The notes beneath the pieces are model-generated. The model saw only the letters and a list, made by a program, of their open reading frames with translations, was not told where the DNA came from and did not search any database. From the sequence record MN159079.1: a DNA stretch of 64,000 bases; one strand, given 5' to 3'. Within the stretch, counting starts at the first letter, position 1; each line of letters begins with the position of its first letter. The position numbers and the translations under genes are program-made. Below, one piece after another: positions 21,401 to 60,217 of this stretch.

Positions 21401-24400
21401 ATGTCTGATGAAAAGTTGGGTATCGCTAAACAGGTATTGTCTCATTTGGGAATAGAGCCAGAGCAACTTCCCGAATATATGTTCGACGATAAAACCAAGC
21501 GAACCCCATTAACTAATTTGGACGAACGTATTCTGTCTCATTATGACGAAGAGTCACTGTGGACAATGAAGACAGTTCGTTTCCTTAAAGACTTCTCTAG
21601 GTTTAACGCAGGTGTTCACCTCGAGACGAATAACGCCACGTTCTTGCGTACCGCTGAGCTATTCAGGAACATGGGTATTAAGAACTATTACTTCCTTCTT
21701 CAAATCAACAACCCTTTGTTGAAGGATGTTAACCCGTGGGATCCTGATCTCACAGACGAACAGAAACTGATGGTTCTTCAAGAAGCTCAGGAGAACGTTT
21801 GGTACATTGTTCGTGAGTTGATTAAGATCGACGGTCGTCGTTTCCGTGCTAACCGTGCGGTCATCTCCTTTATATGGAGCTGTCTCAACCACCTTCCAAC
21901 ACTTATCTTGATGCCTCGTCAGAGTGGTAAGGATCAGGATGGTGAAACGGAAGTTCTCCGTCCGGATGGCAAATGGACAAAGATCAAAGATCTTAAAGTC
22001 GGTGATGAGGTGTTGGCTCGTGACGGCACAATTGCCAACATAACAGGCTTCTACCCACAGGGTGAGCAAGTCAGTTATGAGATCGAGTTCATCGATGGCC
22101 GTAAAACAAAAGCTGGTAGTGAACATCTCTGGACGATGTGGGATCCAAAGAAGAAGGGTTGGGTCGTCAGGGATACCGAGCACATTAAGGAACGTTTGGA
22201 TAAGAATGAAGAAGGACTTTCCATTCCTCTCCCTCTTGAAGATCGTATCACCAAGAACAAGGACTACGTTCTTCATCCTTATATCCAAGGTGTTTTGTTT
22301 ACAGCCGGTGATAAGTCTGGGTTAACATTCAAAACTGAAAAGAATGATGTCGTAACCAGGGTTAAGAAACTCCTTACTCGTGGTTGGATTGTTACCAGTG
22401 ATGGTGATCAACACACCATCTCCATGAGGACTGATTACGACCCTACAGTTCACCGTAATGTCAAACAAGCGATGCGTGATTTCGGTATCGCGGATGTTTC
22501 CCCTAAAGACAGAGCAGTTCCGAAAGAGATCATGGAAGGTTCCCACCATGATCGCAAAATGTTCATTCGTGGCATCATGGATGTTGATGGTCATATCGAG
22601 CGTGGCGGTAGTGTTTATTACGCTAGTGCTGGTGAGAAACCATCTGAAACTGTACAACGGTTGTTCTGGTCTATTGGTGCCATCTGTAAGGTCACCAAAC
22701 GCGGATACAAGGTTAACGGGGATGAACCTGGCGAACGTATCACTCGTTACTCATATCGTCTCAGAGTGCGTTACACGGAGCCTGGTGAGCTGTTCCTTGT
22801 TGATGATCGCAGTCTGGTTGTATCGGCGAGGGCATTGCAATACAACAGCAAACTTTCCTTTAAATCCATCACTAAGGAAAAGAAGCTTAAACAAAGTTAT
22901 TGCATCGAACTTGACCATCCTGAAAACTTATACATAACCGACAACTGGATTGTGACACACAACACAGTTGGGATGCAGGTAATGGCATTCATCATGCAGT
23001 ACCTCATCGGTCGTGGATTCAAGGCAGGCCTGATCACCCTGGCTGCATCAAACCGTATGCAGTTTGTTAACGCCATGAAGAAGATCCGTGCCGGTCTTCC
23101 TGAGTACTTGGTGAACGTCACCTATAAGGATAATGACGCCGGTAACATTTTGACCTATCAGGCGTACGGTGCTGAGAATAAGAACACATTCGAAGTCCGT
23201 GTACCTTCTGGTGGTGAAGATGGTGCTGAAAACGTGTCTCGTGGTAGTACGTTTGAAATGCTGCTCTATGACGAGCCGGCGTGGATGAAGTACATCGAAA
23301 ACATCATGAACGGTGCCGGTCCTTCTACGTTGACCGCTCAAAAGAACGCTAGAGAAAAGGGTATCCCTTACTTCACTGCCAAGGCTACAACACCAAACAG
23401 TATCCTGAAGGAAGAAGGGAAGTACATGTATGGTGAAATGAAGAAAGCGACAGAGTGGCGTGAAAACTTCTTTGACAGTTATTCTGAATCTCACTTGCTG
23501 CAACGTGTCACCAAGGCTTCACCCGTCAGTACGACTCAACCACACATCTGTATGCAGTTTAACCACCTTCAACTTGGTTTTGGTAAAGACTGGGTTAAGG
23601 AGACTATGGATAAGCTTTCGCTTTCCTGGTCTAAGGCAAAGATTGACTTGTTGATGATGTGGACCGAGGAAGGGAAGAACAAGGTATTCGATGATAAAGT
23701 TCGGGAGCAACTCGCAAACGTTAAACAGGAACCTCTGTGGAACGAAGAAATTGCCAACACTGGTCTATTCATAGACTGGTATTACAGCAATGAGCGACTC
23801 AATGAATTCTTCACCGATCCTACTGAATTCTTCTTGATGGGGATGGATACGTCCGATGCGGTAGACCGAGATGCGTGTACGTTGATTATACGGCGAATGA
23901 AGACTGGTGAGAACATTGGGATAGGTCGTTATCCCCGTGCGTTCCTGGACGACGTGACGACGGTTCTGAGGGAGATGATAGTGCGGATTGAAAACAGTCT
24001 GCTGATTATCGAACGTAACCGTGCAGTTGACATGATCGATAAGTTGCTTCTTACTCTTCCAGCTCTCGACATTGATCCTTTCAAACGTATCTTCAATGAT
24101 GTCTATCAAGATCCCGTGAAGTTCCGTAACGAATGGAAGGATGTTCAGGAGGTTCATTTCAAGTACCGTACTAAAGAGTTCTATCTGAAATACAAGGAAC
24201 GTTTTGGCTTCAGGACAGGACCCTCGACACGACGTCAAATGTACGACTTCCTTCATGAAGCGGTTAACTCCACTGGCGCTGGACTGCGTCACCCAATGCT
24301 TGCTGATGAACTTATCGGACTTGAAACAGATAACGACGGTCGCATTGACCACAGTAAAAAGGGTAACGATGACTTGGTCATCGCCTGGCTACTGACGTTC

Positions 24401-24742
24401 TGGTTCATTAAGTTGGGGTATAACAAATCTCTTTATGGAATACCTCCAGGTCAGACGCTTATTCAGCTGACGACATTGGTTAACGATCCCGATAAGGAAG
24501 GGTTTACCAAAGACCAACTTGAGTTGTTCATCAGAATCAAGGACCGTATTGAAGAACTCAGTAAAGAACTTGAAGACACCGATAACGATATTGTTGCCAG
24601 ACGTATAGAACTTGAGATTCGTAAGCTGGGTGAATACATCCCACGCGAACTCAGGAAGACTATCACGATTGATGAGATTCTTTCTAACGCTAGTAAAGAA
24701 CGGAACAAACGTGGTCTGGATAAACGATTCGGACGAGTATAA
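21401..24742 (+). CDS. terL: terminase large subunit, intein-containing
   Basis: Walker A PRQSGK|T (split by intein), Walker B MLLYDE, RNase H-like nuclease GMDTS...D and GNDDLVIA. Confidence 0.92.
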   Translation: MSDEKLGIAKQVLSHLGIEPEQLPEYMFDDKTKRTPLTNLDERILSHYDEESLWTMKTVRFLKDFSRFNAGVHLETNNATFLRTAELFRNMGIKNYYFLLQINNPLLKDVNPWDPDLTDEQKLMVLQEAQENVWYIVRELIKIDGRRFRANRAVISFIWSCLNHLPTLILMPRQSGKDQDGETEVLRPDGKWTKIKDLKVGDEVLARDGTIANITGFYPQGEQVSYEIEFIDGRKTKAGSEHLWTMWDPKKKGWVVRDTEHIKERLDKNEEGLSIPLPLEDRITKNKDYVLHPYIQGVLFTAGDKSGLTFKTEKNDVVTRVKKLLTRGWIVTSDGDQHTISMRTDYDPTVHRNVKQAMRDFGIADVSPKDRAVPKEIMEGSHHDRKMFIRGIMDVDGHIERGGSVYYASAGEKPSETVQRLFWSIGAICKVTKRGYKVNGDEPGERITRYSYRLRVRYTEPGELFLVDDRSLVVSARALQYNSKLSFKSITKEKKLKQSYCIELDHPENLYITDNWIVTHNTVGMQVMAFIMQYLIGRGFKAGLITLAASNRMQFVNAMKKIRAGLPEYLVNVTYKDNDAGNILTYQAYGAENKNTFEVRVPSGGEDGAENVSRGSTFEMLLYDEPAWMKYIENIMNGAGPSTLTAQKNAREKGIPYFTAKATTPNSILKEEGKYMYGEMKKATEWRENFFDSYSESHLLQRVTKASPVSTTQPHICMQFNHLQLGFGKDWVKETMDKLSLSWSKAKIDLLMMWTEEGKNKVFDDKVREQLANVKQEPLWNEEIANTGLFIDWYYSNERLNEFFTDPTEFFLMGMDTSDAVDRDACTLIIRRMKTGENIGIGRYPRAFLDDVTTVLREMIVRIENSLLIIERNRAVDMIDKLLLTLPALDIDPFKRIFNDVYQDPVKFRNEWKDVQEVHFKYRTKEFYLKYKERFGFRTGPSTRRQMYDFLHEAVNSTGAGLRHPMLADELIGLETDNDGRIDHSKKGNDDLVIAWLLTFWFIKLGYNKSLYGIPPGQTLIQLTTLVNDPDKEGFTKDQLELFIRIKDRIEELSKELEDTDNDIVARRIELEIRKLGEYIPRELRKTITIDEILSNASKERNKRGLDKRFGRV
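21932..22963 (+). mobile_element. class-3 intein with LAGLIDADG homing endonuclease (344 aa)
   Basis: Starts DQDGETEV..KIKDLKVGDEV; block B SEHLW, block E FIRGIMDVDG, block F YCIEL, block G IVTHN followed by Thr+1; removal restores the GKT Walker A. Confidence 0.9.
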
Positions 24743-30058: not shown

Positions 30059-30134
30059 TGGCAGGCAAGCAAGGATTCGAACCTTGGACATCTGGTTTTG
30101 GAGACCAGCGCTCTACCAACTGAGCTACTCACCT
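30059..30134 (-). tRNA. tRNA-Trp (CCA)
   Basis: 76-nt cloverleaf; anticodon arm CTGGT-CTCCAAA-ACCAG; encoded 3' CCA. Confidence 0.95.
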
Positions 30135-30322
30135 GTAATACGAATTCACATTACTACACACTCGCCGTTCTTCCTAGTTTCCGTTCCGAACGTTCCACGG
30201 TTCACCGTCACCATATACTTTATCCATTCGGACGCCATCTGTGGCTATCAAGTACTTAGGTCCATATTGGTTATGTCTGTTGACACCCGTGTGTAAACCA
30301 GATTAATCTGGGGTGAAAAATA

Positions 30323-30399
30323 TGGCAGGGATAACGGGGCTCGAACCCGCGACCTCCGGCGTGACAGGCCGGCACTCTAACCATCTGAGCTACATCCCT
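30323..30399 (-). tRNA. tRNA-Asp (GTC)
   Basis: 77-nt cloverleaf; loop CTGTCAC; encoded CCA. Confidence 0.95.
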
Positions 30400-30405
30400 A
30401 AAATG

Positions 30406-30504
30406 TTTACCCATCACATGTTTTTACATCGTAGGCGGCTGTGGATCTCAGGTATCTACCGAAGTAGCCTGACCAGATAACCCCGAAACCACATGACAGG
30501 TAAA
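30406..30504 (-). ncRNA. candidate structured RNA between tRNA-Asn and tRNA-Asp
   Basis: 14-bp closing helix with G-U wobbles only on the minus strand; internal CTAC-TTCG-GTAG tetraloop hairpin. Confidence 0.5.
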
Positions 30505-30505
30505 T

Positions 30506-30581
30506 TGGCGGTTCCTGCTGGACTTGAACCAGCGACATATGCATTAACAGTGCACCGTTCTACCTACTGAACTAAGGAACC
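30506..30581 (-). tRNA. tRNA-Asn (GTT)
   Basis: 76-nt cloverleaf; loop CTGTTAA; encoded CCA. Confidence 0.95.
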
Positions 30582-47045: not shown

Positions 47046-48002
47046 ATGACCAACGCTGTTTTCAACATCTACCTGTGTGGTGGTGTCGGTATCAAAATAG
47101 GTAACCTGTTCAGCGCGGTAAGCCGCCAATCCCGCCACGTCGATCAGATCGTTGCTCTGGATTCGTCCACCGCCAACAAAGCAGTTGATGACTGCTTCCC
47201 GATCGAACGTCTGGAAGGTGCCGAAGGTTCTGGCTCCGACAAACGTGCCAACATGCACCTGTACAAACCTTTCGTCAAGCAAGTACTGTCCAAGTACCCG
47301 CCCAACAAGTTGAACATCGTCGTGTTCACTGGATCCGGTGGTACTGGTTCCGGTATCGGTCCGCACGTCATGCGTGAATTCCTGGAAGCGGGGATTCCGG
47401 CACTGGCAATGGTGATTGGTGATGACAGTTCCATGAAAGAACTGGACAACACTGTCTCCACTCTGCGTTCCCTGGCAGCACAAACCAAGCTGGGTGTTCC
47501 GGTTTGTTTCACCTACCACCTGAACCGCCCTGAACTCACCCACTCCGCTGTGAACCATCAAGTGGTCCAGAGCATCGACTCTGCCCTGTTGGCACTGAAC
47601 CTGGATAACGTCAGTATCGACTACGCTGACATCTCCAACCTGTTCTTCTTCAGCCGGGTAGTCAACGCCGACCCCATCCTGACCCAGATGACCTTCCTGA
47701 CGGATACCGACCTGGACAAGTACGATCGTCAACCGATCGCCGCTATCTCTGTCTTCGCCAAAGAAGATGACATGCGTGCACCGTTCCCTGGTCTGATGTA
47801 CCGCAAAGCAGGTACCTTCAGTGAAGCCAATGCCGGCTTTGAAGAATCCTGTCACGTAGTGCTGGATCACGGCAGCACCCTGGCTGAGCTGGAAACCATG
47901 ATGGAGTCCCACAAGAAACGCACCGATGGTATCGGTTCTCGTTTCAAAGTTCAGAAGTCCGCCATTATGGACGGTGCCGACGACGACGGGATGTTCTGTT
48001 AA
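47046..48002 (+). CDS. phuZ: PhuZ phage tubulin
   Basis: IYLCGGVGIKIG, GAEGSG, tubulin signature GSGGTGSG, acidic C-terminal tail DDDGMF. Confidence 0.93.
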   Translation: MTNAVFNIYLCGGVGIKIGNLFSAVSRQSRHVDQIVALDSSTANKAVDDCFPIERLEGAEGSGSDKRANMHLYKPFVKQVLSKYPPNKLNIVVFTGSGGTGSGIGPHVMREFLEAGIPALAMVIGDDSSMKELDNTVSTLRSLAAQTKLGVPVCFTYHLNRPELTHSAVNHQVVQSIDSALLALNLDNVSIDYADISNLFFFSRVVNADPILTQMTFLTDTDLDKYDRQPIAAISVFAKEDDMRAPFPGLMYRKAGTFSEANAGFEESCHVVLDHGSTLAELETMMESHKKRTDGIGSRFKVQKSAIMDGADDDGMFC

Positions 48003-54025: not shown

Positions 54026-56014
54026 ATGTCCGATAAACCTTCCAACAAAGGTTTCAGTCTCCCTGGACAAGACAGTCCTAGTGAAACTGGTGCCCAACAC
54101 CAACCTGCCGTATCTGAAGTTCAAACCAAACCCGTAACCACCCTCAAAGAAGGAAAAGTGAATATGTCTATCAACTCCCTGGCCTCCCTGATCGGTATGT
54201 CCTCCCTGGTTTCCCAAGCTGGCACCATCCCGGAAGTGAAAGCAATCGCCAAAGGTATCGACGACGCCGTGGCTGATCTGAAGCGTCAGATCGCTACCCC
54301 TGAGCAAATGGCAACCCTGCCGGCCGACGTGACCCACCTGACCTCCGACATCACCCAGCACCTGCCGGGTATCGTACTGCCGCTGCGCCTGGGCCAGACC
54401 GTGTACGTGATGCCGATCCTGTTCTGGAAAGCCGGTGTGACCGACGCTACCGACACCATCATGGTGAACCAAGGTGAAGCACCGCGTGGTTTCGCCAAGA
54501 CCGCGTCCAGCTTCATGCACATCGACATGATCAACAAGATCCGCGACAGCTTCGCCTTCTACGGCGAGAAGAAAGCTGACGAAGTCATGGCCACCAGCCC
54601 CTGCGTGATCAACCTGGAGCACTGGATCAAGGAAGGCAAGAACACCGAAGAAATGGTGCGCGAAGTCGTCAACGTGATCCTGACCGAATGGCACGCTGGT
54701 CTGATGACCCTGGGCGTGATGCTGACCACCAAGGCCGGCGGTACCATCCCCAGCCCGTTCAAGAACAGCAAGCTGTTCGGTGATCAGGACACTGCCATCG
54801 CTCGTGTAGAAGCTGCCTACAACCCGGTCATCCGTGGTGTCACCACCGGTTACAACCTGGCTGTCAACATCTCTACCGCGCCGAAGAACGCTCACATGGT
54901 CCACACCAACAACATGAACGCCAAGTCGGTCTGCAAGACCTTCCTGAACGTCCAGTTGGACACCATGCAGCCGCAGCAGTACGGTCATCTCCGTCAGCGT
55001 GCCGGTATGGGTCAGAACGTTGGTCCGATCGTTCCGGTCATCTCCATCGGTCAGACCATCCCGGGTGAAACCCTGAACCACAACCAGTCCATCCTGTCGG
55101 CCGCCCTGGGTCTGTTCGCAGCCCTGACCGCCAACAACCTGCGTTTCTACTCCGAAGCAATCCGTGCCAAGGAAGTGGGTCACCGCGGTAACCTGGCTGT
55201 GTTCAACAACTACCTGTCCGCCATCACCCAGGGTCAGTACACCTCCGATCAGCTGCTGTCCGCCAAGAACATCAGCAACGTCGCCGTGGTGAACGACTGG
55301 ATCCAACGCTTCGTGAACAGCCGCGCTGTCTACGTAGTCGACGTACCGACCTTCGGTCCGGATTCCAGCATCTCTGACTTCTGGATGGGCATGGCCAAGT
55401 TCGGTCCGGGTTCCCTGTACCAGAACACTCTGATCGCCATCTTCGATGCACTGACCAACAAGAAGTTCAGCGAGAAGGCAGAAGAGAACGCCAAGATGGC
55501 TCAGCGTGATCCGTCCAAGCACTGGACCAAGGCCGACAAGGTTCTGTCCCTGACCCAGATGATCGTCCCGCGCGGCCGTGCTCAGGGCAAGGATGGCAAG
55601 TGGTTCTGCCTGAGCGAAATCGATGGCATGTTCCTGCGTCAGACCGAGTACCTGGGTACCAACGAAGTCGAGATCGCCGAGTACCAAGCTCTGGTACAAG
55701 GTTCCGTTCCGGGCGTTGATCGTCGCACCCGCGAGTTCAACCTGATCAACAAGCTCCAGCACATGTTCCAGGGCAACGTGATCATCGATGGTTTCGATGC
55801 TCGCCTGATCTGGTCCTCTGCGCTGTTCAACACCCTGGCCGAAGCAATGGTTTCCACCGGTACTCTGACCGTGAACTCCAGCGCTCACCAGTCCAACTGG
55901 ACCATGGAATACTCCAACGAGCTGTTCGACCACTTCATGACTGCCGGTATCGTTCCGCAAGTCGGTGGTGGCGCGAGCGCTGCTCAGTTCGGCATGTACT
56001 CCAACCTGGTCTAA
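54026..56014 (+). CDS. chmA: chimallin (phage nuclear shell protein)
   Basis: 662 aa with the strongest codon bias in the window and a disordered N-terminus; located between the gp52-like gene and nvRNAP beta-prime, with an early promoter; motif pattern recalls chimallins. Confidence 0.82.
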   Translation: MSDKPSNKGFSLPGQDSPSETGAQHQPAVSEVQTKPVTTLKEGKVNMSINSLASLIGMSSLVSQAGTIPEVKAIAKGIDDAVADLKRQIATPEQMATLPADVTHLTSDITQHLPGIVLPLRLGQTVYVMPILFWKAGVTDATDTIMVNQGEAPRGFAKTASSFMHIDMINKIRDSFAFYGEKKADEVMATSPCVINLEHWIKEGKNTEEMVREVVNVILTEWHAGLMTLGVMLTTKAGGTIPSPFKNSKLFGDQDTAIARVEAAYNPVIRGVTTGYNLAVNISTAPKNAHMVHTNNMNAKSVCKTFLNVQLDTMQPQQYGHLRQRAGMGQNVGPIVPVISIGQTIPGETLNHNQSILSAALGLFAALTANNLRFYSEAIRAKEVGHRGNLAVFNNYLSAITQGQYTSDQLLSAKNISNVAVVNDWIQRFVNSRAVYVVDVPTFGPDSSISDFWMGMAKFGPGSLYQNTLIAIFDALTNKKFSEKAEENAKMAQRDPSKHWTKADKVLSLTQMIVPRGRAQGKDGKWFCLSEIDGMFLRQTEYLGTNEVEIAEYQALVQGSVPGVDRRTREFNLINKLQHMFQGNVIIDGFDARLIWSSALFNTLAEAMVSTGTLTVNSSAHQSNWTMEYSNELFDHFMTAGIVPQVGGGASAAQFGMYSNLV

Positions 56015-56766: not shown

Positions 56767-58368
56767 GTGAGTACCATTATCCGAGTTCTTAAGGATTACT
56801 CCGAAGAACAATTACTTCCTCAAAATCTCTTCAACCAGATTCTCGAGGGCACGGGGTATATTCCGGAAATGGATGATGAGCGGTTCTATACTGCAATCTA
56901 TCCCCATTTCGAAAACTACGACCAACGACACGACAACTGCACAACACTCCCGATCTACCTGAATGACCACGACTTTCGAATCGAAGAAGATCGTGAACGT
57001 ATCGTGCAAGCCCTTCGTACCGAGTATGAAGGTAACACATTCGATACGGTTGCAGTTTGTTCACCCAGCTGCGGTAAGTATCGCGGCAACATGTATCTCA
57101 ACTCTGGGATTGTCTGTGACGTTTGTGGCGAGACACCAAGTCGTCCACTGAGCGAACAGATCGAGACCAAGGTTTGGTTGAGAACTCCACCCAGGGTTTC
57201 TGGTTTCCTGTCACCGGCTATATATGAGGTATTCCTCAGTAAGCTCAAAACCAAAACACCGAAAATCAATTTCGTTCAGTATTGGATGGATGAAGGTTAT
57301 CGGAGAGACAAACGGTTCCGTGATCCAGTAGGTGAAACACCGGCGTACAAAATGGCTCAGAAGCTCAATGCTTTTAGTAGTGCCATTGGTATCGACTTCG
57401 GGTACAATAATTTTATCGATAACATCGATACGATTATCAATGCAGCAGTCACCCAAGACTTTATGGGGATCCTCGATCTCAATGAAGTACAACGTGACCA
57501 TTGCACCCGGTTCTGGGCCAAGTATAAGGAGTTTGCAGTTAGCAACTTCCTTCCGCTTCCGAACAAGATTGCCACGGTGATCGAATCTGACCAACGTGAC
57601 CGTTACGTCAACAAGGAAAAGACTGATCTGGAAAAGATCTTCTTTACCATAGCAGATATGTATCACGAAATGGACCATCGTTCTGTTCAGAACGAAGTTC
57701 TGTTCGGTAAGAACTATTTCGAGATGCAGGCAGTGATGCTCAAAGTGATGAAAGAGATTCTCTTTAAGAAGAAGGGGATGTTCCGATATCACGCCGGGGC
57801 TGGTAAACTGCCATTTACTGGGCGCTCCATCATTACCGGTGAATCAGGCGTTTGTCGTTCTGATACCGTGGTGGTTCCCTGGCTTTATGGCATCACCTGT
57901 TTGAACCATCATCTGACCAACTGGTTGTACCGTCGCGGTTATACACCCAAAGCGGTTAAGCGGATCATCCGTGAATCTGCCAACTTCCGTCACCCGGTGA
58001 TAGAAGAGTTCTTTGACTGGGTGGAGAACAACCGCTATGCTGTAGCAACAGTAGGTCGTAACCCATCGATTCAGTTCTTGTCATCAAGAACTTTCTTCAT
58101 CAAGTTCAACCGGGATATTGAGGATAAGTCTATTCGTATCCCAATCACCTGCGTGAAAGAATTTGGTGCTGACTTCGATGGAGACCAGATGTACGTATGG
58201 TTCATTCCGGACCTGTTCGGTAAAGTTGCTGGCTACGCCAACTTTGGTCATCAGCAAATGCTCGACCCGAACAAACCGTTCCGTACCAGTCGGTTCGCAA
58301 CTCGCGCCAAGAACGTTCTTCTCAACCTCAACTCGCAATTATTGGACGAGCCAATAGCGGAGGATTAA
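56767..58368 (+). CDS. non-virion RNA polymerase beta-prime N-terminal subunit (phiKZ gp55-like)
   Basis: Zn finger C-x3-C...C-x2-C, K..K.G.FR, FTGRSII, GRNPS, catalytic GADFDGD; GTG start with AAAGGAG. Confidence 0.92.
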   Translation: MSTIIRVLKDYSEEQLLPQNLFNQILEGTGYIPEMDDERFYTAIYPHFENYDQRHDNCTTLPIYLNDHDFRIEEDRERIVQALRTEYEGNTFDTVAVCSPSCGKYRGNMYLNSGIVCDVCGETPSRPLSEQIETKVWLRTPPRVSGFLSPAIYEVFLSKLKTKTPKINFVQYWMDEGYRRDKRFRDPVGETPAYKMAQKLNAFSSAIGIDFGYNNFIDNIDTIINAAVTQDFMGILDLNEVQRDHCTRFWAKYKEFAVSNFLPLPNKIATVIESDQRDRYVNKEKTDLEKIFFTIADMYHEMDHRSVQNEVLFGKNYFEMQAVMLKVMKEILFKKKGMFRYHAGAGKLPFTGRSIITGESGVCRSDTVVVPWLYGITCLNHHLTNWLYRRGYTPKAVKRIIRESANFRHPVIEEFFDWVENNRYAVATVGRNPSIQFLSSRTFFIKFNRDIEDKSIRIPITCVKEFGADFDGDQMYVWFIPDLFGKVAGYANFGHQQMLDPNKPFRTSRFATRAKNVLLNLNSQLLDEPIAED

Positions 58369-59039: not shown

Positions 59040-59109
59040 TAGGTGGGAGCTAACCGGGAGACCGGTTAGCTCTTCCTTTATATAGTTATTTTTTTTTTAG
59101 GAGTGTTAT

Positions 59110-59442
59110 ATGACCCCCGAAATTATCCATGAAGACAGTGTTGTTACCGCATTCAAAGTGAATGACCATCTCTACGGCGTTCACCCCAAGAACCTTGAAG
59201 TGGGGACTTATCAAGGCGTGGTCAAGTTCCAAAAAGGAGATCCGGCAATAGAAGAGAATGGTTTGACCTTGGAAGCACTACTCGCGATCTGTATCAGTCG
59301 GCTGGATAGTTGTAACCAAGGTAACTTCAAATGTCTCCATAACGATCTCGCAATCGAACATATGAAAGCTGCCAAGGTAGCTCTCGAAGAAAGACAGTCC
59401 GATCGCAAGAACCGTTTTGTACTTGCTACCGATAAGGTGTAA
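59110..59442 (+). CDS. tad1: Tad1-family immune-signal sponge
   Basis: FQKGD..NGL..EALLAICISRL..N.G.F.C.HN.LAI.....A...L..R..DR..R aligns with the recalled Tad1 pattern FQEGP..NGV..EDL......RL..FQ...F.CREN..AI..LEEA...L..R...R..R. Confidence 0.7.
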   Translation: MTPEIIHEDSVVTAFKVNDHLYGVHPKNLEVGTYQGVVKFQKGDPAIEENGLTLEALLAICISRLDSCNQGNFKCLHNDLAIEHMKAAKVALEERQSDRKNRFVLATDKV

Positions 59443-59443
59443 T

Positions 59444-59929
59444 ATGAAATTTGGTTATTCAAAGTTGATGCTGGATCTTGGATCAGCATCCAGAATCCGC
59501 AAAGCGGCCATGAAGGTCATCGAAGGGACCGAGAAAGAAAAGGACCAAGCAGTCCTCGACGTAATCAACATCCCTGCAACCGAACTCCACGCCACACTGA
59601 TGTATGACAAACGTAATCCGGATATCATTCCGGATACCAACCGTGCATCATATAAGGCAAAGGTAACCGGTGTTGAACGTCTGGGTACGCCAGGTGGTAA
59701 CTACTACGCCCTGGTACTGCTTTGCGAGTCAGAAGGGATTACAAAACGTCACGAAGAACTTCTCGAACAAGGTTTCAAGCATAGCTGGCCTGACCTGAAG
59801 ATTCACGTTTCACTCAACTATGGTGACCAGGTTACCGTTGCGTACCCCATTATCAAGGAAGCCTTCGAGAAGGGTTATCTCCCTACCGAAGTGACCTTGG
59901 GTGCTGAGTGCTGGAACGAGTGTCGTTAA
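59444..59929 (+). CDS. acb1: Acb1-like 2H phosphodiesterase
   Basis: Two HxT/S motifs (LHATLMY, IHVSLNY); ALVLLCES...RH...G..HSWPD..IHVSLNY parallels T4 Acb1 TLVLVLDS...RH...G.THDFDD..PHITLSY. Confidence 0.7.
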   Translation: MKFGYSKLMLDLGSASRIRKAAMKVIEGTEKEKDQAVLDVINIPATELHATLMYDKRNPDIIPDTNRASYKAKVTGVERLGTPGGNYYALVLLCESEGITKRHEELLEQGFKHSWPDLKIHVSLNYGDQVTVAYPIIKEAFEKGYLPTEVTLGAECWNECR

Positions 59930-60001: not shown

Positions 60002-60151
60002 ATGTTTGAAGCAATGTCCAACTCCCAAGCTTTCGGTTTCGCTTTCTTCGGTGCTATCGGCGTAATCGCTGTTATCGCTATCGGTGCCAATGAATACTTC
60101 AAAGCCAAGAAAGCTCTGAAGCGTCCGATGGCTACTCGCAACAAGCGTTGA
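60002..60151 (+). CDS. small single-pass membrane protein (49 aa)
   Basis: GAGG RBS; TM helix AFGFAFFGAIGVIAVIAIG then a basic tail; own terminator 60157-60179. Confidence 0.75.
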   Translation: MFEAMSNSQAFGFAFFGAIGVIAVIAIGANEYFKAKKALKRPMATRNKR

Positions 60152-60217
60152 TATCAACCCTCTCCCATTGGGAGAGGGTAGTTTCAATTACATTTATTTT
60201 TTTTTGTCGAGGTTCAT

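What the first reader, a model, noticed from the sequence alone, without database searches (positions are those of the whole stretch)
59110..59442. Tad1-family signal sponge with altered pocket residues inside the nucleus core block
Seen: C-terminal pattern FQKGD-x5-NGL-x2-EALLAICISRL-x3-NQGNFKCLHNDLAI...R-x2-DR-x2-RFVLAT. Established: Tad1 proteins sequester Thoeris gcADPR, and some also bind CBASS cyclic oligonucleotides. Versus the recalled Tad1 consensus, FQ becomes CN, CREN becomes CLHN and RGVEGT becomes RFVLAT, so ligand specificity may differ (inference). Nucleus-forming phages remain exposed to second-messenger abortive systems, so this fills a real gap in their protection.
Basis: partly seen in the sequence, partly recalled or inferred. 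Interest (0 to 1): 0.75.

Follow-up and report, generated by a model that had tools for sequence, protein, structure and literature searches.

The report
Tad1-like sponge gene beside Acb1 nuclease
This 110-residue gene of the nucleus-forming Aeromonas jumbo phage D9 is a real but divergent member of the known Tad1 family of phage proteins that soak up bacterial alarm molecules, and it sits directly in front of an Acb1-type enzyme gene that destroys such molecules.

Summary
The ORF at 59110..59442 (+) exists exactly as described. The window is Aeromonas phage D9, which encodes chimallin and PhuZ. The protein belongs to the Tad1 family. A profile of its relatives hits solved Tad1 structures at E 1.6e-30. 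An AlphaFold2 model (pLDDT 94) matches only Tad1 chains in the PDB (TM 0.75-0.82).

- Most of the gcADPR pocket is kept: His20, Gly43, Arg64, Phe73, Asn78, Arg95, Arg99.
- The adenine-stacking Phe is Cys68.
- Both cyclic-trinucleotide contacts are gone (Arg to Leu76, Thr to Glu83).
- None of the eight hexamer-interface residues is identical.

The next gene (59444..59929) is an Acb1-family phosphodiesterase with both catalytic His motifs. The Tad1-like/Acb1-like pair holds the same position after the RNA polymerase beta' gene in twelve jumbo phages of at least five genera and one metagenomic contig.

Most likely it is a cytoplasmic sponge for Thoeris gcADPR, paired with an enzyme that degrades CBASS signals. 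Binding is untested.

Tad1 is already known in phiKZ, and one relative is already annotated as anti-Thoeris. This is a new member of a known kind, of moderate interest.

The parts
59110..59442 (+). Tad1-family sponge gene (D9_0146, 110 aa): four N-terminal beta-strands plus a C-terminal two-helix hairpin
   Evidence: ORF. PDB Tad1 hits. AF2 pLDDT 94.3. Foldseek top 20 all Tad1. PHROG 2428 E 2e-17.
59444..59929 (+). Acb1-family 2H phosphodiesterase gene (D9_0147, 161 aa). Its ATG lies 1 nt after the Tad1-like stop codon. Both His motifs are present (LHATL, IHVSL).
   Evidence: Pfam PF23474 E 8.1e-15, 55 bits against a cutoff of 27. PDB Acb1 7t26 E 1.7e-4 with both His motifs aligned. PHROG 755.
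59045..59074 (+). 13-bp hairpin followed by a T-rich tract (to about 59098), between the upstream gene and the Tad1-like gene. Probably the terminator of the upstream unit and the start of a new one.
   Evidence: A hairpin plus T-run at the same place in OBP, N1M2, Sureiya, SXP01 and CF8.
59099..59103 (+). AGGAG ribosome-binding site, 6 nt before the ATG
   Evidence: Read directly from the sequence.
60002..60151 (+). 49-aa ORF (D9_0148) with one hydrophobic helix and a basic tail. Possibly the third gene of the unit. Function unknown.
   Evidence: A small ORF occupies the same position in OBP, N1M2, CF8, PS1 and L015.
60157..60179 (+). 10-bp GC-rich hairpin, terminator-like, closing the three-gene unit
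54026..56014 (+). Context: chimallin (nuclear shell protein)
   Evidence: phrog_4795 E 1.4e-81.
56767..58368 (+). Context: phage multisubunit RNA polymerase beta' piece (contains the DFDGD motif), the syntenic anchor of the locus
   Evidence: Translation. Annotation.

Best explanation
The gene encodes a small cytoplasmic Tad1-family sponge. Two protomers interlock through the beta-sheets and helix hairpins. Each of the two resulting pockets encloses one TIR-made signal molecule, most likely 1''-3' gcADPR of type I Thoeris, so that the host effector is never switched on.

The protein lacks the Arg/Thr pair and the interface residues that let CbTad1 and CmTad1 assemble into hexamers and trap cyclic trinucleotides. 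It is therefore predicted to be a dimer that does not bind cA3 or cAAG.

That job probably falls to the translationally adjacent Acb1-family phosphodiesterase, which would hydrolyse CBASS cyclic oligonucleotides. Together they form a two-gene anti-signalling unit that covers the defences the chimallin shell cannot block.

Shown here: family, fold, residue pattern, synteny and purifying selection. Inferred: ligand, oligomeric state, division of labour and expression as one unit.
For: Family and fold:
- Single-sequence phmmer hits Tad1 chains 7uav/8kbg/8kbh at E about 3e-4.
- The profile of 109 relatives hits CbTad1 at E 1.6e-30, CmTad1 at 2.8e-28 and phiKZ gp184 at 2.3e-25.
- tblastn reaches the founding SBSphiJ7 Tad1 at E 1e-3.
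- The AF2 model has pLDDT 94.3 and pTM 0.81. The 20 best PDB folds are all Tad1 (TM 0.75-0.82) and the next hit is at E 0.9.

Pocket (mapping onto the contacts listed by Leavitt 2022):
- Kept: H29 to H20, G55 to G43, R78 to R64, F87 to F73, N92 to N78, R109 to R95, R113 to R99.
- R95 is invariant, and R64, N78 and R99 are at least 90% conserved in 109 relatives.
- CbTad1 R57 is an insertion that validated SBSphiJ7 Tad1 also lacks.

Cyclic-trinucleotide site and hexamer (residues from Li 2023):
- R90 to L76 and T97 to E83.
- The eight CmTad1 interface residues R88, T95, K96, Q98, E99, M102, W103, K106 map to L, E, H, K, A, V, A, E.
- In the family the R/T/W triad travels together: 12 of the 22 sequences with W carry the full R/T/W triad, while only 3 of the 87 without W have R at the R90 position.

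Neighbouring gene: Acb1 by Pfam above the gathering score, with both His motifs.

Synteny: the pair is adjacent in D9, D3, D6, LAh10, AerS_266, CF8, ZPAH34, PS1, OBP, Sureiya, N1M2, SXP01 and metagenomic contig L015.

Selection within the genus: 2-8 synonymous against 0-3 non-synonymous codon differences, all non-synonymous ones in the beta-sheet. Acb1 shows 3-13 synonymous and 0 non-synonymous.

Hairpins bracket the unit.
Against: - No binding or plating data exist for any member of this clade.
- The adenine-stacking Phe (CbTad1 F82) is Cys68 here, and is F, L or Q in sister phages. F82A/N92A abolishes gcADPR and cGAMP binding in CbTad1, so affinity or specificity could differ.
- The pocket-forming alpha1-alpha2 loop carries clade-specific Asn69, His77 and Asp79 in place of Gln, Glu and Ala.
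- Pfam PF24729 (Acb2/Tad1 hairpin) does not detect the protein even at E 1, although it detects SBSphiJ7 Tad1.
- Oligomeric state was not modelled.
- Co-transcription is inferred only from spacing and hairpins.
- My count of relatives without the R90-type Arg (94 of 109) is far higher than the 6% reported by Li et al.. The sets differ, and mine is biased toward neighbours of this protein.
Confidence: 0.72

Rival explanations
1. It is a Tad1-fold sponge retuned to a different signal, such as a cyclic dinucleotide that Acb1 cannot cleave (3',2'-cGAMP, cGG), His-ADPR or N7-cADPR. In that case gcADPR is not its main ligand.
For: The stacking Phe is replaced by Cys68. Clade-specific Asn69, His77 and Asp79 sit in the loop that the partner protomer donates to the pocket. 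Tad1 homologues already differ in cyclic-dinucleotide spectra. Other sponge families have switched ligands. The jumbo-phage sequences sit on the far side of a 96% supported split from the canonical Tad1s.
Against: The phosphate-binding Arg pair, the Hoogsteen-reading Asn, the ribose-buttressing Phe and His20 are all kept. The stacking position is not fixed within the clade (F, L, C, Q), which argues against a single new specificity built on it.
Confidence: 0.2
2. It is a virion-packaged, injected protein like phiKZ gp184, or simply a structural protein as some homologues are annotated.
For: phiKZ Tad1 has an N-terminal part wedged into the capsid, and its C-terminal Tad1 part is injected. Several Bacillus phage homologues are labelled 'structural protein'.
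Against: The D9 protein is only the 110-aa Tad1 domain, with no room for a capsid anchor. The frame opens 9 nt before the ATG. gp184 is 230 aa and aligns only over its residues 103-228. D9 has a single Tad1-like locus.
Confidence: 0.05
3. It is a decaying or non-functional remnant, or an Acb2-type protein that shares only the helix hairpin.
For: No Pfam hit. Several canonical residues are lost.
Against: It is conserved with purifying selection across at least five genera. The full four-strand sheet plus hairpin is modelled with high confidence and no Acb2 chain is among the significant fold matches, which are Tad1 only.
Confidence: 0.03

Closest known systems
CbTad1 / CmTad1 / SBSphiJ7 Tad1 (Thoeris anti-defence 1; PDB 7UAV, 7UAW, 8KBB-8KBH, 8SMD)
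   Same: Same fold (TM about 0.8) and same size class. The same Arg-Arg-Asn-Phe-His-Gly core of the gcADPR pocket. Phage-encoded.
   Different: 21-27% identity. The adenine-stacking Phe is Cys. The cyclic-trinucleotide contacts (Arg, Thr) and all eight hexamer-interface residues are replaced. The beta4-alpha1 loop is two residues shorter than in CbTad1. The protein is not detected by Pfam PF24729.
phiKZ gp184 (Tad1 of a nucleus-forming jumbo phage; PDB 8Y6V chain I)
   Same: A Tad1 domain in a chimallin-encoding jumbo phage, and the same rationale: signalling defences act outside the phage nucleus.
   Different: gp184 is 230 aa, anchored in the capsid and delivered by injection. The D9 protein is a free 110-aa domain made after infection, sits at a different locus and is paired with Acb1.
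AerS_266 WNV45880/WNV45879, OBP gp060/gp061, N1M2 gp39/gp40
   Same: Orthologous gene pair at the same locus (41-45% identity for the Tad1-like protein), with the same clade signature N-x-G-x-F-[KQ]-[CS]-x-[HQY]-N-D.
   Different: In GenBank AerS_266 is already labelled anti-Thoeris and anti-CBASS, while N1M2 and SXP01 carry the misnomer 'ABC transporter ATPase'. The Petsuvirus/Nimduovirus versions have an extra N-terminal extension of about 34-46 aa and Gln at the stacking position.
Acb1 (T4 57B / Erwinia phage FBB1, PDB 7T26), for the downstream gene
   Same: 2H phosphodiesterase with both H-x-T/S motifs, of similar length.
   Different: Distant in sequence (E 1.7e-4 to 7T26). Activity is untested. 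It is annotated as 'RNA ligase' in relatives.

Membership tests
Tad1 | Fold: N-terminal antiparallel beta-sheet followed by a two-helix hairpin | tested here: met
   The AF2 model (pLDDT 94.3) has strands 4-8, 12-18, 21-26 and 36-40, and helices 54-68 and 76-101. Foldseek top 20 are all Tad1, TM 0.75-0.82.
Tad1 | Sequence homology to experimentally validated Tad1 proteins | tested here: met
   phmmer E about 3e-4. Profile E 1.6e-30. tblastn to SBSphiJ7 Tad1 E 1e-3.
Tad1 | gcADPR pocket core (CbTad1 H29, G55, R78, F87, N92, R109, R113) | tested here: met
   These map to H20, G43, R64, F73, N78, R95 and R99.
Tad1 | Adenine-stacking Phe (CbTad1 F82) | tested here: not met
   Cys68. Among 109 relatives the position is F 74, L 14, C 8, Q 3. 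This is a variable feature: Li et al. report 12% of homologues with pocket substitutions.
Tad1 | Cyclic-trinucleotide pocket (CbTad1 R90, T97) | tested here: not met
   Leu76 and Glu83. This is a secondary site and is not part of the original family definition.
Tad1 | Hexamer (trimer-of-dimers) interface residues | tested here: not met
   None of the 8 CmTad1 interface residues is identical. The actual oligomeric state was not modelled.
Tad1 | Pfam PF24729 Acb2/Tad1 hairpin | tested here: not met
   No hit at E 1 or better. SBSphiJ7 Tad1 hits at 2.9e-8.
Tad1 | Binds gcADPR and inhibits Thoeris | not testable with these tools
   Needs ITC or native PAGE, a ThsA assay and plaque assays.
Acb1 (downstream gene) | Pfam PF23474 above the gathering score, and two catalytic H-x-T/S motifs | tested here: met
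   55.3 bits against a cutoff of 27. LHATL and IHVSL align to the motifs of 7T26. Seven orthologues also hit.
Acb1 (downstream gene) | Cleaves CBASS cyclic oligonucleotides | not testable with these tools
   Needs an HPLC or TLC cleavage assay.
Acb2 | All-helical sponge without the N-terminal beta-sheet | tested here: not met
   The model has a four-strand sheet, and no Acb2 chain is among the significant PDB sequence or fold hits.

The most novel reading that the evidence does not exclude
The Tad1-like proteins of the OBP/Aeromonas branch of chimallin-encoding phages form a distinct subfamily. On this reading they are dimeric and blind to cyclic trinucleotides, with a retuned pocket (Asn69, His77, Asp79 and a variable stacking residue). 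They would bind a signal other than, or additional to, 1''-3' gcADPR, for example a nucleotide that Acb1 cannot cleave. They would work as one half of an anciently fixed sponge-plus-nuclease operon embedded in the core gene block.
Probability: 0.22. Interest if true: 0.6.

Novelty: new member of a known kind. Interest (0 to 1): 0.4.

Why it matters
The chimallin shell shields phage DNA from nucleases but not from defences that sense infection and signal with small molecules in the cytoplasm. Only phiKZ's injected Tad1 has been described as an anti-defence protein in jumbo phages.

A second deployment now appears: a free Tad1 domain fused in an operon with an Acb1 nuclease, held at one locus across at least five genera. 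This suggests that counter-signalling is a long-standing, near-core need of this phage branch.

It also offers a natural experiment. Sponges that kept the gcADPR pocket but lost the trinucleotide pocket, alongside a nuclease that can cover that loss, could show how sponge and nuclease functions are partitioned. For Aeromonas phage therapy in aquaculture, it flags which host defences these phages may already evade.

Tried and rejected
- Pfam and NCBIfam gave nothing for the protein itself.
- The word-indexed homologue search found only the D6 orthologue. The exhaustive HMMER search was needed and found 629 relatives.
- Single-sequence AlphaFold2 failed (pLDDT 45). Only the alignment-based run was usable.
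- I looked for a shared promoter motif upstream. The 12-mer at 59077 is not enriched in the window, and only the hairpin plus T-run is shared between genera. Sigma-70-type hits are at chance level. No statement on expression timing is possible.
- The published Nature version of Li et al. and the supplements of the sponge-diversity preprint are not held. I therefore could not check whether a member of this clade was among the 20 Tad1 homologues tested.
- I tried to obtain phiKZ gp184 residue by residue through a 230-aa relative, but that protein is not gp184.
- A literature search for Thoeris and CBASS prevalence in Aeromonas hydrophila found nothing useful.
- Acb2 and structural-protein readings were rejected; see the rival explanations.

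Full report
**What is there.** The window is Aeromonas phage D9 (MN159079.1, genus Ludhianavirus, 260.9 kb); window position equals record position minus 62,000. The ORF 59110..59442 (+) is real. It has an ATG start, is 110 aa long, has an AGGAG 6 nt upstream, and is the first start in a frame that opens at 59101. GenBank calls it a hypothetical protein (D9_0146).

**Context.**
- Chimallin lies at 54026..56014 (phrog_4795, E 1.4e-81) and PhuZ tubulin at 47046..48002 (E 1.8e-81). The phage therefore has the hallmarks of a nucleus-forming phage.
- The gene follows an RNA polymerase beta' piece (56767..58368, DFDGD motif) and a conserved 221-aa protein of unknown function (phrog_3254).
- A 13-bp hairpin with a T-run (59045-59074 and after) precedes the gene. 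A second hairpin (60157-60179) follows a small 49-aa membrane-type ORF.

**Family.**
- The single sequence hits PDB Tad1 chains at E about 3e-4 over residues 36-108, and PHROG 2428 at 2e-17.
- Pfam, including PF24729 (Acb2/Tad1 hairpin), does not see it.
- An exhaustive HMMER search found 629 relatives at E up to 1e-3.
- A profile of 109 of them hits CbTad1 at 1.6e-30, CmTad1 at 2.8e-28 and phiKZ gp184 at 2.3e-25, over the full length.
- With that alignment AlphaFold2 gives pLDDT 94.3 and pTM 0.81: four strands and then two long helices.
- Foldseek against the PDB returns twenty Tad1 chains (E 9e-7 to 4e-5, TM 0.75-0.82) and nothing else below E 0.9.

**Residues.** I combined the HMMER alignments with the contacts listed by Leavitt et al. 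and Li et al..

| Site | CbTad1/CmTad1 residue | D9 residue | Status |
|---|---|---|---|
| gcADPR pocket | H29, G55, R78, F87, N92, R109, R113 | H20, G43, R64, F73, N78, R95, R99 | kept |
| gcADPR pocket | F82 (stacks on adenine) | Cys68 | changed |
| gcADPR pocket | G120, N122 | Ala106, Asp108 | changed |
| gcADPR pocket | R57 | none | lies in a loop insertion that validated SBSphiJ7 Tad1 also lacks |
| Cyclic-trinucleotide site | R90, T97 | Leu76, Glu83 | lost |
| Hexamer interface (CmTad1) | R88, T95, K96, Q98, E99, M102, W103, K106 | L, E, H, K, A, V, A, E | none identical |

- In CmTad1, alanine replacement of five of the interface residues gives dimers that no longer bind cA3.
- Across 109 relatives the Arg/Thr/Trp triad travels together: 12 of the 22 sequences with Trp carry the full triad, against 3 Arg among the 87 without Trp. 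D9 belongs to a triad-less type.
- The lid motif RFVLAT is close to CbTad1's own RNVLGT.

**Clade.**
- tblastn finds orthologues (36-45% identity) in other chimallin-type jumbo phages of Aeromonas, Pseudomonas (OBP), Serratia, Klebsiella and Shewanella.
- They share the signature N-x-G-x-F-[KQ]-[CS]-x-[HQY]-N-D in the alpha1-alpha2 loop. The stacking position varies (F, L, C, Q), and they all lack the Arg/Thr/Trp triad.
- In a quick maximum-likelihood tree they sit on the opposite side of a 96% supported split from 53 canonical Tad1s that include SBSphiJ7 Tad1. The protein is short and most forks are unresolved.
- Within Ludhianavirus the gene shows 2-8 synonymous against 0-3 non-synonymous codon differences, with none of the non-synonymous ones in the helix hairpin.

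**The neighbouring gene.**
- ORF 59444..59929 starts 1 nt after the Tad1-like stop codon.
- It matches Pfam Acb1 (PF23474, 55 bits against a cutoff of 27) and PDB Acb1 7T26, with both H-x-T/S motifs aligned.
- The same pair, in the same order after RNAP beta' and phrog_3254, is present in D3, D6, LAh10, AerS_266, CF8, ZPAH34, PS1, OBP, Sureiya, N1M2, SXP01 and metagenomic contig L015.
- A canonical-motif Tad1 on a lambda-like contig has no Acb1 beside it.
- AerS_266's GenBank record already labels its pair 'Anti-Thoeris' and 'Anti-CBASS nuclease', although the accompanying paper does not discuss them.

**Mechanism proposed.** The protein is a cytoplasmic sponge, probably a dimer with two enclosed pockets, that sequesters TIR-derived gcADPR. 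Acb1 hydrolyses CBASS cyclic oligonucleotides, which would make a trinucleotide pocket on the sponge dispensable. Family, fold, residues, synteny and selection are shown here. Ligand, oligomer, division of labour and co-transcription are inferred.

**Prior knowledge.** Tad1 is a well-studied family. phiKZ gp184 is a Tad1 whose N-terminus is wedged in the capsid and whose C-terminal part is injected. It is described as the only anti-defence protein known in jumbo phages. D9's version is the bare domain at another locus. The finding is therefore a new, divergent member of a known family, plus a conserved Tad1-Acb1 arrangement that I did not find discussed in the papers searched.

**Caveats.**
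- No experiment exists for this clade.
- My residue frequencies come from relatives nearest to D9 and differ from the 6% and 12% substitution figures of Li et al..

Noticed in passing
L013:1-217 (D3), L006:1097-1465 (CF8), L014:1125-1483 (ZPAH34); equivalent to about window 58130-58190: A group I intron (Rfam RF00028, 58-62 bits) interrupts the 3' end of the RNA polymerase beta' gene in D3, CF8 and ZPAH34, leaving a 59-aa last exon annotated as a separate CDS. D9 has an uninterrupted 533-aa ORF although it is 99.3% identical to D3 nearby.
   Followed up: partly
L003:2899-3324 (OBP) and L008:2315-2776 (SXP01); L002:2947, L014:2447: Annotated starts of the Tad1-like genes look wrong. OBP_060 and the SXP01 gene have an in-frame upstream ATG that adds about 34-46 aa, similar to the N-terminal extension of N1M2 and Sureiya. 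The AerS_266 and ZPAH34 starts look too early, since MELTTEIIH aligns with D9's start. The role of the extension is unknown.
   Followed up: partly
L010:1706-2722 (Burkholderia jumbo phage FLC9 gp131): A 338-aa protein with an N-terminal cyclophilin-type prolyl isomerase domain (Pfam PF00160, E 2.5e-44). The Tad1-like tblastn match (query residues 40-108) lies at its C-terminal end. This is an unusual fusion.
   Followed up: no
window 21401-24742 (+): A 1113-aa ORF matches terminase large subunit families at its N-terminal 180 aa and again further on. Residues about 172-408 also match primase and DnaC-like loader families. It may be an insertion, an intein or a fused domain.
   Followed up: no
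window 60002-60151 (+): A 49-aa ORF with one hydrophobic helix and a basic tail lies between the Acb1-like gene and a terminator-like hairpin. A small ORF occupies the same slot in relatives.
   Followed up: no
window 30062-30581 (-): Three tRNA genes in a cluster (Rfam RF00005, 66-72 bits).
   Followed up: no
N1M2 gp39, SXP01, OLIVR5 and the PDB 7UAV molecule name: The label 'ABC transporter ATPase' is propagated onto Tad1-family proteins in several phage records and in the PDB entry name. It is a misnomer, since there is no ATPase domain.
   Followed up: no
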